From Bugula neritina (taxonomy: Eukaryota > Animalia > Bryozoa), in assembly GCA_964035545.1 (NCBI GenBank), contig OZ037765.1, positions 20,894,995 to 20,958,994 of the forward strand: a DNA stretch of 64,000 bases, written 5' to 3'. This document shows, in pieces, positions 29,201 through 50,200 of this stretch (its first letter is position 1; every line of letters begins with the position of its first letter). The position numbers and the translations under genes were made by a program. Below the pieces are notes generated by a model. It saw nothing but the letters and a program-made list of their open reading frames with translations. It did not search any database and was not told where the DNA came from.

Positions 29201-32200
29201 TCACAAATTTTATGGCAGGGATCAGATATTTCACATTCATTAATATCTAAAAAGGATAACAAGTTAACAATTCAATTGCACATAATAAGTGCTTTTTTGT
29301 GTGTGAGTGTTAGAGTGTGTGTGTGTCCATAAGCATCTTATTTGAAAGCAAAATGATTTAAACATGTCGTAACATCACAATCAAACTACCATCACAAGTA
29401 GCTCCATCTTCATTAAGCTCATAACCGTTAGAACAGACACAGACATATGATCCTGGAGAGTTGATACAGATGTGATCACAACTACTTTCATCTTCACATT
29501 CATCTATATCTGTGCATGTTTTACCATCTCCTGTGTATCCAGGTGGACAATCTCCACATCTGTAAGTAGTATGAATATTTAGTAGATGTTTAGAGATACA
29601 TAAAGATAAAAGAGAAATCTACAGATATTGTATCAACGTAGACTTACGTGTATCCAGTGTGATCAGCTGGTGGTGGACTATCTACACACAGAACTGATGG
29701 ATAACAGGGAGAAGCTACCAGAGAACATGCATCTAAATCTGTATCACAAGTATCTCCTGTATATCCAGTGGGACAGATACAATCCAATACCACAGAGCTG
29801 TGAAAGTGTATCATAAATATATGAAAGTGAAACAACTATTGTCATTTAAACATTTCCTATTTACGAATGCAGGGATAATTTATAAAAATTTACAAAGAGT
29901 CAAAGTGATATTTTTGGGTAATGCATGTACTTTAAAATGAGGTGAGTGTGCAATATATAACTGATATATGATAGATATTAAGCATGTAGCTATTACTTCA
30001 GATATGTTCAAGTAAACAGATTTCCGGCTATAAGTTTTTAACTATATTAAAAGCATAATATTTTCATATTGAGCCCTGACCAGTAAGACAAAATTTCTTT
30101 TACTGTATACTCTAGCTGTTTTATTGTGTCAGTTTATCATTAATAAGGCCAGGCTATTTTAGATAAATTTCTTTATTAGAGTATAGAATTGGTACATTAT
30201 TTAATAACAGATACAAACTTGGTTTTTCATTCAAAAATATAGCATACATTTTTACTTGACAACTATAACATTGACAGCCCAACTAACAAGAAACGTTTAT
30301 ACAACCTTTGGATGTGTTGTCAGAAGGTTTTGTTCACAACATTAGAATCAAACATTTCCGTTTAACGTTATGGTAATGTTTGATAACTGTTTAAAGTCAA
30401 CATTTTGGTCAAACATTTAACAAATGTTGAGAAAAGTTGTTGTATAAATGTATATCACAACGTTCATTAAATGTTTGACCCAAACGTTGTAACAAAACAT
30501 CCATTAAACGTTGGTAGAATGTTTAAAAGCAACGTTTGTTCTAAACATGAAATTAACGTTATAACCCAACGTTTAATAAATGTAATTTTCAAAGGTTTAT
30601 TAAGTGTTTGAAAAAAAGGTTGTATTAATGTTGTTTTCAGAACATTCTATCAACGTTTTGCACAAACTGTTTCAATAAAACATTAATACAACGTTTATAC
30701 AACATTTCAATACAACGTTTCTTTCAAACGTAACCACAATGTTTTAATTCAACGTTCAATAAATGATTTTTACCAAGGTTAATAGAATGTTTGATAAAAA
30801 GGTTGGATCAATGTTTTTTCAAAATGTTTTATAAATGTTTTAACTAAATTGTTTTACTAAACATTTATACAACATTCATAGAACGTTTCAAACAACGTTG
30901 TTCTGCAAACATAAACATAACGTTTTAACCCAATGTTAAAGAAACGCTTGATACCAATGTTGTTCAAATGTTTGATAAAATGGTTGCATGAATGTATTTT
31001 GAAATGTTGTATAAACCTTTTTTCAAAAAGGTTTTCAAAAAACATCAATAAAACGTTACTTCAACATTTCAATGCAACGTTTTTTCTCCAATATAAAGTT
31101 AATGTTATAAAACAACGTTACTAAAACAGTTTCTCAGTAAGGTTACTAAAATGTTTTAAAAAAATGTTTCATCAATGTATATTAGAAACGTTGTATAATC
31201 TATTTTTACACAACTCAAATATTTAGTTTTGTAGTTGGAGTTGCGGACTCTCTCTATTTCTACAACTCTGCTTATAATTATTTTATAGTGCTATATAAAG
31301 TTTGATGTAAAGCAAGAACTTCTGTAATTATAAACAATAATTTATTAGAGTAAAGAAGAAGATATCTAAAGTGTTTCCTAATAAAAGATTAAAATTGAAG
31401 GGGCAACTTTTTACTGGTTATGGCAAGTTATTTTTATTGATAATTGATGACAATATAATAAAGAAATTTGACCTGTCGAGTAGAAAAACTTAGGCTAAAA
31501 AAACATAAACGGTGTATTTGTGAAAAAACTAAATAACAAGTTTATTGGGTGATCATGAATTTAATTATAGTGGGTTGCATAAAAGCTAGTGTCAAAAGCT
31601 ATCTAATAGCTTGCTTGACAGCTATATATAGTGATTAAAACAAAACGTTTAATAATTTACAAAATGTGCTTGCTGCACTTTGAAAAATAACGCTGATGTT
31701 AAATTATGCGTTAGTTACCGGAGTAGTATTAAGTAAGTACCTTAAGTAAAAATTCGCTTGATTGGATGAAGTTTTTAAGAGTTGTCTGTTACTGAAAATA
31801 TGCCTTTTGAAAATTCGTTCTGGTTAGGTTTTGTTGAATCTTAATATTTAAAATTGAAATTGCACCAGAGTTCTGTAAATAAAATATTGTAATGGACTTG
31901 AATGTTATATGTCAGAAAATTTAATTAAGTCGAAGTGTAACATAAGATGTTACTGTGAAATATTTTCCTCCAATTTTGTCTTCCAATGCAACTAGGATAG
32001 TGTATATTGGAAATATAACTCCTTATTAAATTATAATTAGGTTTTTACGTGTGCTTGTGTGCACATGGTTCGTGCATGTGTGCATTTTTGCCTGGCTTGG
32101 TGTAAATAAAATTAAAAACAACTCCATTTTGAAATTTATTGTGGGAAACTAAGTTGTATTCTTATATCAATTCAAGTCCAATGCTGCCACTTGAGAAATT

Positions 32201-47200: not shown

Positions 47201-50200
47201 AAATTTTTTGTCATCTTTATAGAAAAATATACGAAAATTTGAATTTGCCCATCCATTTTCACAACATATTCTTAAACACGACTTCATTTTACCACAGTTT
47301 ATATATACATTTACATTGAATGTTTTTTTGTTTCTAGTCAGTATTCTTGTTGCTTTGTAGGTGGTCACCATCTTACTGTAAAGAGCAGCAAGACTTTGAA
47401 GCTTTAAATATATATTTTGAGGAAAAGAATGAGCAGACTGAATTCACAGTCTTCAGAAGCCTAATCTGTAACATTCAGTTGGACCTTAATTTTAGATGAA
47501 GCTTAATAATTAGAAAGCTAAAATAACTTTAAATCTCCAAAGCGTAAATAAAGCTCATTGCTAATGTTCAGCTTTGGATATAAAGGGATTAACGTTCTAA
47601 AATGATAATTTGTATTATTCTGTTTACTTGCTTATATACAGAAATGTTTTCTTTGTTGACTTTACTAAATAGCTATGTTTTGAATCAACATTTGTAAATT
47701 AGCTTTACTTTTTTGGCTGCTTAAATTTTTTGTGTATTTCTTATGACCTGTTGCTATCTATAATTTTTGCATTAGCTTCAATATGAATTTATTTATCTAC
47801 TTATTAGCCACATTTTTTTATATGTAATTTATTTTAGCTCATTTAAATTGACAAATAAGTCTTTATATTAGGTTGCACATGTTTTTTTAGTAACAATTAT
47901 TTTTTGTAATCATTGCTCTTCACTTTTAAACAATAAAGTTATCAATACACAATATAAAACTTCCACTTGTATATATTATACTGCTATATATACTTTCATA
48001 TAGCAATGGTTATGTAAACCTTGCCAAATAATTATAATAACCTAAATTTGCAATGCTGCATAGAGTTTATACAACATTATAATAACATTTATGAAAAGTT
48101 GTTTATAGAACGTTGTAGATAAAAAAGCTAAATAACGTCTACATTTCAACATCTAGATAACGCTTGTTCTGCAACATTATAAAAACGTTGCCGAAGAAAT
48201 GTTATGGCAACGTTTGTATGACTTGTTTATGAAACGTTGGTAAAATGGTTTGCAGAAAACGTTGTTGCCTAAACGTTGTGTGAGACAAAGAGATACATTT
48301 AAATTTAAACATTTAAGCAATGTTGGATCGCAACCTTCCACCAACGTTGTATGGAAAACATCTACACAACGTTATGCAACGCAACGTTTATGAAAGGTTG
48401 GTAAAACGTTTTGCGATAAACGTTTGTTTCAAACGTTGTATATAGTACAAAAATGTGTCGACATTTAAACATTTAATAAACGTTTTTTCCAACGTTTATA
48501 CAACGTCATATCAATGTAAATTGTTAGTGGGGAGTGGCCTACGCTACTAAGTTCTTTATTTTACCAATTAGCAGCTGTATAGTTTAATCTTCTGTAGCAT
48601 TCTTAGATCTTTTTATTTTTCAACACGCATTAAATTAAAAAGCAAGTAAAAATATGAACATGTAAGTTTACAACAACTTACTCAGTTTCTGTAGAGAATA
48701 TCTCATCCTCAGATAAGGGTTCACATGTACCATTGTTTACACATTTGCAGATCATAGCTAGGGGAGTTATACTAGAAGTAGCATTCTTGTCATCCTAAAC
48801 AAAAAGCAGTTTGCAACAAAATCAAAATTATAAGTATTTAAAAATCATTATTGTTAATAGCAATAAGTTATGGGTTCGAACCCAACAAATGCCATAAGTA
48901 ATGTTAGGAAAAGCGTGCAGTCATAATTGCTTTTGTGCCCTTCTGAATAAGTCCTTAGCCGATTCAACAAAAAGCCCTTCCATCAGGGTTTTTTCTCAGG
49001 GATGGAAGCTATAAACTAGCGTAAGCTTTTTTATAGATAATTACAATTAGATAAAAAAACAATATAAATTTTTAAAGTGTGTACCATTGCAGACACAGTG
49101 AAGTTAGAAAAGCTGTCCAGATCTTCTATTACACCAGATATGTTAACTTGACCACCATCAACTACTATGCTGCTGTCTACATTTACTGAAACAGTAAATG
49201 GGTCGCCATTTGTGTCATTCACGTGAATCATGTAGTGAAACTCTCCAGTTGGTGTTATCATTACGTAATTGACAGCATAATAGATTTCTGGAGGGAAGTT
49301 GTCTACAAAACATAGTGTCTTTTTCGCAAGCATGGATATAACATACATGTGTTTTTGAGTTTATTAGCTAGAATTGTAATTTTACACAATATTAAAAATT
49401 TGAACTTACTTAAAGCTTCATTTGCAGCAACACTGTCTTCAGCTGTCTTTTTACTGCTTTTACCAACTTCAATGTTTCCTGTGACAAATACATCATACAG
49501 GCAAGCATGATCATCTCCACATGTTTCGTATGCTTCTGTCTTGACTTCCTCAGAAGACCACACCCAGTTATCAATATTATCAGTGAAGACGGGTACAAAT
49601 GAATTGTTGTTATAAGTTGACCAGTCAGTTCCATCTTCAGTATAATACATGATGGAATCCTCTTCAGATACAGCAACTGCAATGCAACAACCCATTGTAG
49701 ACACATAATAGGGTAATATAATTTGATGAAAAGTATCAGCGTTACCAGACAGGAGTCAGAACAATACTTACAAGTGCTCGCCCAATCAAATAACTCTATT
49801 TCTGTAGAGTTAATAGAGATGTGTCCAGTACTATTCAAGTAAGTTAAATCATTTTCCTGATCTCCATCAAACACTCCAGTCAAACCAACTGTTGAACCCT
49901 TGAAACTTGCTGGCAAGCTGAGAGTTAGTGTCAGCATTTCCTAAGTAAAAAGATAATCTTATTTTAGTCTAATGAAAGTTATAAAGCAGTATTCAAGCAT
50001 GACAAATATATTACAAATAAAAAAGTTAAATTTCAAAATTTGTAGCATTCTAAGCTAAGAAAAGAGTCTCATTAGCTTACATTTTCAGGAGCTGCGGTTA
50101 TAGCCAGACCAGAGTAGAAGAGAACTGTCAAGCTGACATTATCTCTTTCAAACATGATGTTACTATCTACTCCTTCTATAGTCTGAGTTCCATTAGCATC

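What the first reader, a model, noticed from the sequence alone, without database searches (positions are those of the whole stretch)
30278..48532. An 18-kb CACTA/EnSpm-like cargo element with intact ends but no visible transposase, inside an apparently intact mucin gene
Seen: 12-bp TIRs (11/12 match) starting CCC, an AG 2-bp TSD and long AACGTT subterminal arrays at both ends. Removing the element leaves a 627-bp intron (the paralog has 206 bp), and the flanking exons 48794-48682 and 29797-29648 splice in frame. Known: animal EnSpm/CACTA elements have CCC- or CAC-type short TIRs, 2-bp TSDs and subterminal repeat arrays bound by the transposase. Inference: this is an unusually large non-autonomous 'Pack-CACTA'-like vehicle that moved about 17 kb of passenger DNA as one unit.
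Basis: partly seen in the sequence, partly recalled or inferred. Interest (0 to 1): 0.8.

Follow-up and report, generated by a model that had tools for sequence, protein, structure and literature searches.

The report
Giant gene-less jumping element family
The 18-kb insert in the mucin-gene intron is a real cut-and-paste transposon with no gene of its own. It belongs to a family of at least a dozen equally long copies that must be moved by an enzyme encoded elsewhere, and it is an unusually large but otherwise ordinary kind of element.

Summary
It lies in an intron whose flanking EGF-like exons stay in frame.

The same genome (other agents say Bugula neritina) has at least 12 copies with both ends. 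All nine read in full share one gene order; the seven subfamily-A copies are 97-98% identical, the two B copies about 91% to them. Eight of ten copies have a perfect 2-bp duplication in unrelated flanks. One copy has a paralogous empty site. So the interior travels with the ends.

The element looks non-coding. Its open-frame lengths match random expectation, while host DNA beside it shows a twofold excess. None of the 150 longest open stretches has a convincing Pfam match, and no RNA family matches.

The "Pack" reading is not supported. No host donor locus or captured exon was found. The interior is family-specific DNA, also present at 66-78% identity in an old 8-kb relative, plus three kinds of nested small repeat and a 65-bp array.

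Superfamily is unproven. The 2-bp duplication and end arrays fit CACTA/Mirage/Chapaev (CMC), but the ends start CCC, not CAC. No autonomous partner was found, and three candidate loci could not be read.

Verdict: a large non-autonomous TIR transposon, a new variant of a known kind.

The parts
30276..30277 (.). Left copy of the 2-bp target site duplication (AG)
30278..30289 (+). Left terminal inverted repeat, CCCAACTAACAA
   Evidence: Identical in 11 of 12 copies; the exception is a 5'-damaged copy on C7.
30278..31220 (.). Left subterminal array. It holds 19 AACGTT hexamers at about 12/24-bp phasing plus many AACATT/AATGTT variants. A 181-bp higher-order repeat occupies 30555-31082.
   Evidence: It is 2.7 times less variable among 12 copies than the adjacent interior.
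31221..33600 (.). Left arm: family-specific non-coding DNA
   Evidence: Only 16 genome candidates were found: twelve full-length close copies (this one included) and four diverged or fragmentary relatives, including 66% identity to the old relative at C1:18.99 Mb.
33600..33990 (.). Nested high-copy interspersed repeat. The right edge is near 33990; the left edge was not mapped.
   Evidence: There are 275 first-look candidates, and the scored ones are 75-83% identical to 33800-33990.
34772..35427 (.). Internal block conserved at 67% with the old 8.2-kb relative. It is also the least variable interior stretch among copies.
35446..35754 (+). Longest open stretch (103 aa). I judge it non-coding.
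   Evidence: No Pfam match, no recognition in the ESM Atlas, and 5 synonymous versus 11 non-synonymous variants among copies plus a frameshift in one copy.
35867..36261 (+). Copy 1 of a ~400-bp high-copy interspersed repeat
36882..37302 (+). Copy 2 of the same ~400-bp repeat. It is 89% identical to copy 1 and 85-92% identical to many genomic copies.
38300..44000 (.). Variable centre. In subfamily B, 38.3-40.0 kb is replaced and 40-44 kb is 10-15% diverged, while the two arms differ by only 2-4%.
38667..39713 (.). Nested ~1-kb MITE-like repeat with 64-nt inverted arms
   Evidence: inverted repeat I1. One search gave 1328 first-look candidates, and the scored copies are 78-85% identical.
45729..47273 (.). 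Tandem array of a 65-bp unit, with 130- and 258-bp higher-order periods
48030..48532 (.). Right subterminal array with 14 AACGTT hexamers
48521..48532 (-). Right terminal inverted repeat. Its reverse complement is CCCCACTAACAA, which contains CACTA at bases 4-8.
48533..48534 (.). Right copy of the target site duplication (AG)
48682..48794 (-). Upstream host exon (EGF-like, mucin-family gene), with a GT donor at 48681-48680
29648..29797 (-). Downstream host exon, with an AG acceptor at 29799-29798. It is in frame with the upstream exon.

Best explanation
The element is one copy of a family of very large (18-20 kb basic size), gene-less, non-autonomous TIR DNA transposons. A DDE-type transposase encoded elsewhere is inferred to bind the phased AACGTT arrays and the 12-bp terminal repeats, excise the whole unit and reinsert it at staggered cuts 2 bp apart. 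Each copy therefore has its own 2-bp duplication.

Shown: the unit, its ends, the duplications, one empty site, the lack of coding capacity, and stronger conservation of the ends than of the interior.

Inferred: the enzyme and its family. CACTA/Mirage/Chapaev (CMC) is most likely, because that group makes 2-4-bp duplications and uses subterminal repeat arrays, and because other agents report active CMC-type transposases with 2-bp footprints in this genome.

The interior is long-standing family DNA with nested small repeats, not DNA recently captured from host genes.
For: Copies and boundaries:
- Both ends recur at 97-99% identity at 12 or more loci, paired in the right orientation 18.0-38.0 kb apart; there is also an 8.7-kb deletion derivative.
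- All nine copies read in full have the same gene order over the whole length. The seven subfamily-A copies (the 8.7-kb derivative included) are 97-98% identical at aligned bases; the two B copies are about 91% identical to them.
- Duplications are AG, TA, AT, AA, GA, GT, AT and TT in unrelated flanks.
- The 30.4-kb C8 copy has a paralogous empty site in a 272-bp local tandem duplication. The empty unit reads GAT-GGGGGG-ACAA and the filled one GAT-GAGGG-CC[element]GGG-ACAA.
- The 8.7-kb derivative has a deletion junction with 5-7 bp of microhomology, as expected from interrupted repair.

No coding capacity:
- Open stretches of 70 aa or more: 11 observed against 9-11 expected (z = 0.1). Three host regions of similar size give z = 4.1-4.3.
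- The best Pfam E-value over the 150 longest open stretches is 0.0056, which is chance level for 150 queries.
- The same route found DDE_Tnp_4 at 4e-38 in a nested element, which serves as a positive control.
- No Rfam family reached its cut-off (one sub-threshold mir-266 match, E 0.02) and no tRNA gene was found.

Ends are the constrained part:
- The left array has 0.10 deviating copies per site against 0.28 in the adjacent interior.
- The CpGs inside its AACGTT motifs are 3.6 times less variable than interior CpGs.

The phased triple AACGTT pattern has 65 genome hits against 1 for the control. All 50 listed hits lie in copies of this family; 15 further hits (30 rows counting both strands) were not listed.
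Against: - No transposase was linked to the family, so mobilisation in trans and the CMC assignment are inferences.
- The termini are CCC..GGG, not the CA..TG or CAC..GTG described for CMC (PMC12730594, PMC4079192).
- PF02992 (Transposase_21) found nothing in the whole genome. That search was also silent in all control genomes, so it says little.
- Exons shorter than about 37 aa, or a protein family absent from Pfam, would escape the domain scan. Only the open-frame statistics argue against them.
- Nearly all copies keep the full 18 kb and there is no swarm of short derivatives. That is unusual if only the ends matter.
- Three variant loci that could hold a gene were not read.
Confidence: 0.72

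Rival explanations
1. The mechanism is the same (non-autonomous TIR element moved in trans), but the enzyme is not a CMC transposase. The family would then belong to another or an undescribed superfamily whose signature is CCC..GGG ends, a non-specific 2-bp duplication and palindromic AACGTT arrays.
For: - Termini are CCC..GGG, while the papers read give CA..TG or CAC..GTG for CMC (PMC12730594, PMC4079192).
- No CMC domain was found in the element or, with PF02992, in the genome.
- Recent work stresses that TSD and TIR features support but cannot override transposase-based classification (bioRxiv 10.64898/2026.08.26.747230).
Against: - Among described superfamilies, a non-specific 2-bp duplication is reported for CMC. 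ISL2EU makes AT only (PMC4482050), which does not fit the AG, GA, GT, TT and AA seen here.
- The right end reads CACTAAC from base 4 and the left end AACTAAC.
- Subterminal repeat arrays are typical of CACTA elements.
- Other agents report active CMC-type elements with 2-bp footprints in this genome; I did not test this.
Confidence: 0.28
2. One reading: a Pack-CACTA-like vehicle that captured about 17 kb of host chromosomal DNA and moves it as passenger.
For: - The family is modular. The arms (30278-38000 and 44000-48532) differ by 2-4% between subfamilies, while the centre is replaced or 10-15% diverged.
- The C8 copy has about 20 kb of other DNA between the arms.
Against: - Searches of the genome with most of the interior (33221-33799 was covered only by the low-yield 16.8-kb search) found only family copies, family fragments and nested high-copy repeats. 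None found a single-copy donor.
- There is no excess of open frames and no domain hits, so no captured exons were seen.
- Interior blocks are shared in the same order with an old 8.2-kb relative at the same 66-78% identity as the ends.
- The element shows no similarity to 45 kb of host DNA in the window or to 36 kb of flanks of other copies.
Confidence: 0.08
3. The element is autonomous. It encodes its own transposase in many very short exons, or a protein of a family that Pfam does not hold.
For: - Host exons here are short (113 and 150 bp).
- Other agents describe a 16-exon transposase without Pfam annotation in this genome.
- Nearly all copies keep the full length.
- One interior block (34772-35427) is conserved with the old relative and varies little among copies.
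Against: - The open-frame length distribution equals the Markov expectation at every threshold. A 1000-aa gene in about 16 exons should roughly double the count of open stretches of 70 aa or more, as the host regions do.
- The longest open stretch shows no purifying selection and is frameshifted in one copy.
- The ESM Atlas does not recognise it.
Confidence: 0.07
4. The copies arose by segmental duplication, not by transposition.
For: Some solo right arms on C2:30.12-30.25 Mb repeat with a period of about 75 kb, as in a segmental duplication.
Against: - Full copies lie on six chromosome-scale contigs (C1, C2, C6, C7, C8, C9). Homology stops at exactly the same base at both ends, the flanks are unrelated, and each copy has its own 2-bp duplication.
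- One copy has an empty site.
Confidence: 0.01

Closest known systems
Non-autonomous CACTA/En-Spm elements of plants (dSpm/I; large CACTA elements such as soybean Tgmt*, 20.5 kb, PMC2613891)
   Same: - Short terminal inverted repeats.
- Hundreds of bp of subterminal repeat arrays that differ between the two ends.
- A short target duplication and sizes that can reach about 20 kb.
- Defective members moved in trans.
- The right end contains CACTA.
   Different: - The duplication is 2 bp, not 3 bp.
- The outermost bases are CCC/GGG.
- The subterminal motif is a palindromic hexamer (AACGTT).
- The host is an animal (bryozoan).
- The whole 18 kb lacks genes or gene remnants, whereas large plant CACTAs owe their size to transposase genes (the 20.5-kb soybean element of PMC2613891 is described as putatively autonomous).
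CMC group in animals (Mirage/Chapaev/EnSpm-like), including the 11-12-kb elements with a 16-exon transposase that other agents report in this genome
   Same: - 2-bp non-specific duplication, within the CMC range of 2-4 bp (PMC4482050).
- Cut-and-paste anatomy.
- Same host genome.
   Different: - Those elements end in CACAG... and encode their enzyme.
- This family ends in CCCAAC..., has AACGTT arrays found in no other family in the genome, and encodes nothing.
- Cross-mobilisation by that enzyme is therefore unlikely, though untested.
Pack-CACTA / Pack-TYPE transposons (PMC6379663, PMC8903248)
   Same: Non-autonomous elements with transposon ends around non-transposase DNA, with a centre that varies between family members.
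   Different: - Pack elements are defined by captured chromosomal, usually genic, fragments traceable to host loci. None is traceable here.
- Pack-CACTA elements make 3-bp duplications.
ISL2EU (PHIS superfamily)
   Same: 2-bp duplication.
   Different: - ISL2EU duplicates AT at A|AT|T (PMC4482050), while this family duplicates any dinucleotide.
- Genuine ISL2EU-like elements (DDE_Tnp_4 + HTH_Tnp_4, AT duplication at AATT in the one copy with both junctions intact, the left junction of a second also at AAATT) are nested inside three copies and have quite different ends.
piggyBac
   Same: CCC..GGG termini (from my own knowledge of piggyBac ends, not tested here).
   Different: piggyBac inserts at TTAA. 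None of the ten insertion sites here is TTAA.

Membership tests
Class II TIR (cut-and-paste) DNA transposon | Terminal inverted repeats at the exact limits of the repeated unit | tested here: met
   The 12-bp TIR matches at 11/12 positions. Homology among 12 copies stops at the same base at both ends.
Class II TIR (cut-and-paste) DNA transposon | Target site duplication of fixed length whose sequence differs between copies | tested here: met
   Eight of ten pairs have a perfect 2-bp duplication. The other two fit GG plus two extra C.
Class II TIR (cut-and-paste) DNA transposon | An empty site lacking the element and one copy of the duplication | tested here: met
   A paralogous empty site exists for the C8 copy in a 272-bp tandem duplication. 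No empty allele or orthologue was available for the window's own insertion.
Non-autonomous element | No functional transposase gene inside | tested here: met
   Open-frame statistics match random expectation while host controls show an excess. The 150 longest open stretches give no Pfam domain. Very short exons cannot be excluded completely.
Non-autonomous element | An autonomous partner with matching ends exists | tested here: inconclusive
   Phased AACGTT arrays occur only in known copies of the family.
CMC (CACTA/Mirage/Chapaev) superfamily | Transposase with a DDE core and the C(2)C / H(3-4)H motifs | not testable with these tools
   No transposase is linked to the family. PF02992 was silent in the genome and in all controls.
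CMC (CACTA/Mirage/Chapaev) superfamily | Duplication of 2-4 bp | tested here: met
   The duplication is 2 bp. The range comes from PMC4482050 and PMC12730594.
CMC (CACTA/Mirage/Chapaev) superfamily | Termini 5'-CA..TG-3' (CAC..GTG) | tested here: not met
   The termini are CCC..GGG. CACTAAC (right end) and AACTAAC (left end) begin only at base 4. The literature says 'in most cases', so this weakens membership without excluding it.
CMC (CACTA/Mirage/Chapaev) superfamily | Subterminal repeat arrays | tested here: met
   There are 19 and 14 AACGTT hexamers in the outer 943 and 503 bp, against 6 in the remaining 62.5 kb of the window.
Pack-TYPE (Pack-CACTA) | The interior consists of captured host chromosomal or genic fragments with an identifiable donor | tested here: not met
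   No donor locus was found. There is no exon signal, and the interior is shared with an old relative.
ISL2EU | AT duplication at A|AT|T | tested here: not met
   The duplications are AG, TA, AT, AA, GA, GT, AT, TT and GG.

The most novel reading that the evidence does not exclude
This could be the visible part of an undescribed cut-and-paste system. Its features would be ends with a CCC cap on a CACTA-like repeat, kilobase arrays of a phased palindromic AACGTT site, and an ability to move 18-30 kb of DNA in one piece with very few internal deletions. Its transposase would sit in one of the unread variant copies, or would no longer be in the assembly. The multi-kb conserved arms might themselves be needed in cis, which would explain why short derivatives are nearly absent.
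Probability: 0.2. Interest if true: 0.6.

Novelty: new variant of a known kind. Interest (0 to 1): 0.42.

Why it matters
The family shows that a gene-less DNA transposon of 18 kb can spread to a dozen or more sites while keeping its full length. One member of 30 kb has a verified empty site. Non-autonomous elements normally shrink, so the near absence of short derivatives raises a question: what besides the ends is needed for movement?

If the partner enzyme is found, it would be a natural large-cargo cut-and-paste system with a simple, well-defined binding motif.

For genome annotation, the family is a clean and easily recognised marker of recent insertions, including in introns of apparently intact genes. 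Copy pairs differ by only 0.2-0.5% in the left 2.4 kb.

Tried and rejected
Their content is known only from match coordinates.
- PF02992 over the whole genome gave no match, but the controls were also silent, so the result is uninformative.
- A 16.8-kb interior query against the genome scored only 5 of 1984 candidates. I replaced it with 2-3-kb queries.
- Rfam gave only a sub-threshold mir-266 match in the array (30 bits against a gathering score of 80), which I rejected. No tRNA was found.
- The ESM Atlas did not recognise the 103-aa open stretch.
- A paralogous empty site for the window's own insertion could not be found, because the paralogue's 206-bp intron does not align with the flanks.
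- Metagenome scans for the host flank and for the left terminus found nothing.
- A weak tblastn match between host exon 1 and the element's longest open stretch (E = 0.73, CxC..NNxTC) was rejected as chance.
- Extra CC at the left end of two copies: I tested whether they are sister copies that inherited a variant end. They are not clearly sisters, so this is left unexplained.
They were handled one by one.

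
Full report
**1. What is there**

The element occupies window:30278-48532 (18,255 bp; G000:C1:20925272-20943526).
- It starts CCCAACTAACAA and ends with the reverse complement of CCCCACTAACAA, an 11/12 match. AG lies directly outside both ends.
- AACGTT occurs 39 times in the 64-kb window. Nineteen lie in the first 943 bp of the element and 14 in the last 503 bp, mostly spaced 12-14 or 24-25 bp. Four are in the 16.8-kb interior and two in the 45.7 kb outside.
- The left array also carries a 181-bp higher-order repeat.
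- The right end contains CACTAAC from base 4 and the left end AACTAAC. The ends therefore look like a CACTA-type repeat capped by CCC.

**2. The host gene**

The gene is on the minus strand.
- Exon 48794-48682 is open in frame 0 with two bases left over. Exon 29797-29648 is open in frame 1. Together with the GT and AG signals, they join in frame and complete an EGF-like cysteine pattern.
- I translated and searched the two exons separately and did not build or search a joined model.
- Without the element and one AG the intron is 627 bp.
- The paralogue in the same window (17017-17124 and 17340-17483, + strand) has a 206-bp intron. That intron does not align with these flanks, so it gives no empty site.

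**3. It is a mobile unit, and the interior travels with the ends**
- The left 943 bp and the right 503 bp each recur at 97-99% identity. They are paired in the right orientation at 12 or more loci on C1, C2, C6, C7, C8 and C9. Spans are 18,039 to 38,001 bp, plus one 8,747-bp derivative.
- I fetched eight further copies in full. All have the same gene order as the window copy from first to last base. The seven subfamily-A copies (the 8.7-kb derivative included) are 96.7-98.4% identical to one another at aligned bases. The two subfamily-B copies are 99.5% identical to each other and about 91% to subfamily A.
- Ten end pairs could be checked. Eight have a perfect 2-bp duplication (AG, TA, AT, AA, GA, GT, AT, TT) in unrelated flanks.
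- The other two copies read GGGCC|element|GGG. For one of them, the 30.4-kb C8 copy, the host DNA is a local 272-bp tandem duplication whose other unit is uninterrupted. The empty unit is GAT-GGGGGG-ACAA and the filled one GAT-GAGGG-CC[element]GGG-ACAA. That equals a 2-bp GG duplication plus two extra C at the left end. This is a paralogous empty site.
- The 8.7-kb derivative lacks element positions 839-9936, and its junction shows 5-7 bp of microhomology, as after interrupted repair.
- In the left 2.4 kb, some copy pairs differ by only 0.2-0.5%, so movement was recent.

**4. It does not code for anything detectable**
- No stop-free stretch exceeds 103 aa.
- The number of open stretches at every length threshold equals the expectation from Markov chains of order 1-3. 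For 70 aa or more, 11 were observed against 9-11 expected.
- As a control, three host regions of 13-18 kb beside the element show about twice the expected number (z = 4.1-4.3 against 0.1 for the element). The statistic therefore does detect the short-exon genes of this genome.
- The 150 longest open stretches (37 aa or more) were scanned one by one against Pfam. The best E-value was 0.0056, which is chance level for 150 queries.
- The same route found DDE_Tnp_4 (4e-38) and HTH_Tnp_4 in an element nested in another copy.
- The longest open stretch has 5 synonymous and 11 non-synonymous variants among copies and a frameshift in one. The ESM Atlas does not recognise it.
- No Rfam family reached its cut-off (one sub-threshold mir-266 match, E 0.02, in the left array) and no tRNA gene was found.
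- Subfamily B and its private 4-kb segment are equally empty.

**5. What the interior is**

Searches of the genome with 2-3-kb pieces covered the interior except 33221-33799. That stretch was included only in the 16.8-kb search, which scored 5 of 1984 candidates. The searches show two components.
- Family-specific DNA, found only in copies and fragments of this family.
- Nested high-copy repeats:
  - one ending near 33990;
  - two copies of a ~400-bp repeat at 35867-36261 and 36882-37302;
  - a ~1-kb MITE-like element with 64-nt inverted arms at 38667-39713.
- A 65-bp tandem array lies at 45729-47273.

No segment has a single-copy counterpart that could be a host donor. The element has no similarity to the rest of the window or to 36 kb of flanks of other copies.

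An old relative at C1:18986536-18994768 (8.2 kb) matches in the same order and at 66-78% identity:
- the left array;
- 31330-32720;
- 34772-35427;
- 44040-46172;
- 47518-48028;
- the right array.

These blocks are therefore old family DNA, not recent cargo.

The family is nevertheless modular. Between subfamilies A and B the arms (30278-38000 and 44000-48532) differ by 2-4%, the centre by 10-15%, and 38.3-40.0 kb is replaced. The C8 copy keeps the left arm to at least 33.2 kb and the right part from 41588, with about 20 kb of unread DNA between.

**6. The ends are the constrained part**
- Among 12 copies, the left array has 0.10 deviating copies per site against 0.28 in the next 1.5 kb.
- Interior CpGs are 3.8 times more variable than other interior sites, which suggests methylation-driven decay. 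The CpGs inside AACGTT are 3.6 times less variable than interior CpGs.
- Mutations after insertion hit ends and interior alike. The difference must therefore arise in lineages that went on transposing. This is what one expects if the arrays are the binding sites of the enzyme (inference).

**7. Where is the enzyme?**
- A phased triple AACGTT pattern has 65 hits in the genome against 1 for the reversed control. All 50 listed hits lie in copies already known; 15 further hits (30 rows counting both strands) were not listed. No other family was seen to use these arrays.
- Candidates for an autonomous member are the C8 variant, a C2:24.23-Mb variant (left end 98% identical, interior 76-78%, with a 7-kb insert) and the old C1 relative.
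- Other agents' notes describe active 11-12-kb CMC-type elements in this genome, with a 16-exon RAG1-fold transposase, CACAG ends and 2-bp footprints (s1-453677, s1-481183, s1-453645). I did not test these. Their ends differ from ours, so they are relatives of the likely enzyme at best.

**8. Comparison with known families**
- A non-specific 2-bp duplication with subterminal arrays fits the CMC group (2-4 or 2-5 bp: PMC4482050, PMC12730594).
- ISL2EU is excluded because it makes AT only (PMC4482050).
- piggyBac-like CCC ends do not fit because no insertion is at TTAA.
- CMC termini are described as CA..TG 'in most cases' (PMC12730594) and as invariably CAC..GTG for Chapaev (PMC4079192). Ours are CCC..GGG.
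- Recent work warns that TSD and TIR features cannot override transposase-based classification (bioRxiv 10.64898/2026.08.26.747230).
- Membership in CMC is therefore likely but unproven.
- Pack-CACTA elements are defined by captured chromosomal fragments and make 3-bp duplications (PMC6379663). Neither holds here.
- Plant CACTA elements of about 20 kb exist (PMC2613891), but the one I could read about is described as putatively autonomous.

**9. Verdict**

It is unproven on the superfamily and not supported on the 'passenger DNA' idea.

The unusual points are:
- the size of a fully gene-less element;
- the near absence of short derivatives;
- the end type;
- the missing partner.

I rate it a new variant of a known kind, of moderate interest. 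No other agent's report on this family was shown to me. Two first-reader notes without follow-up (s1-457938, s1-453905) may concern other copies.

Noticed in passing
L037:2626-3357 (-); inserts in copies C6:3598476-3619894, C9:9558759-9581162 and C9:9719963-9744591: Three of the eight fetched copies carry independent 3.5-4.3-kb insertions of the same element, which encodes DDE_Tnp_4 + HTH_Tnp_4. It ends AGACCATGTAAAAC.... One insertion shows an AT duplication at AATT and a second has its left junction at AAATT, the ISL2EU signature. This matches other agents' ISL2EU notes for this genome.
   Followed up: partly
G000:C8:6090115-6120543 and G000:C6:3598476-3619894 (L008/L020, L012/L018): Two copies have two extra C before the left CCC terminus, and both sit in GG targets (GGGCC|element|GGG). 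They are not clearly sister copies, and the origin of the extra bases is unexplained.
   Followed up: partly
G000:C6:739603-777603, C9:3087278-3122507, C8:6090115-6120543: Three copies hold 17-20 kb of extra unread DNA at only two positions (about window 33.9 kb and 41.6 kb). The C8 copy looks like left arm + ~20 kb + right part from 41588, as if two such copies had recombined.
   Followed up: no
G000:C8:273634-4048891 (14 places): The last ~210 bp of the element's right end recurs at 86-92% identity at 14 or more places spread over 4 Mb of C8, 13 of the 14 on the + strand. It may be a solo end carried in a repeated unit.
   Followed up: no
G000:C2:30118543-30255381: Five solo right arms within 134 kb, all on the minus strand, alternate between about 81% and 96-98% identity with a period of about 75 kb. 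No left ends are present. This looks like a segmental duplication that contains old and young fragments.
   Followed up: no
G000:C9:2332612-2444370: About ten fragments matching window 44837-45758 at 78-82% identity are clustered in 110 kb, on both strands.
   Followed up: no
element interior, e.g. window:31221-32720 and its counterparts in 12 copies: CpG positions in the interior are 3.8 times more variable among copies than other positions. This suggests methylation-driven decay of transposon copies in this genome.
   Followed up: partly
window:17017-17124 and 17340-17483 versus 48794-48684 and 29796-29650: The paralogue's second exon is 98% identical in protein to the host exon, while the first exon is only 58% identical. 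This fits the exon-sized gene conversion another agent described for this mucin-4-like family.
   Followed up: no
left 2.4 kb of 12 copies (L001-L012) versus whole-length alignment: Copy relationships differ between the left arm and the whole element. For example, C6:3651406 groups with subfamily B in the left arm but with subfamily A overall. The copies are therefore mosaics, by recombination or template switching.
   Followed up: partly
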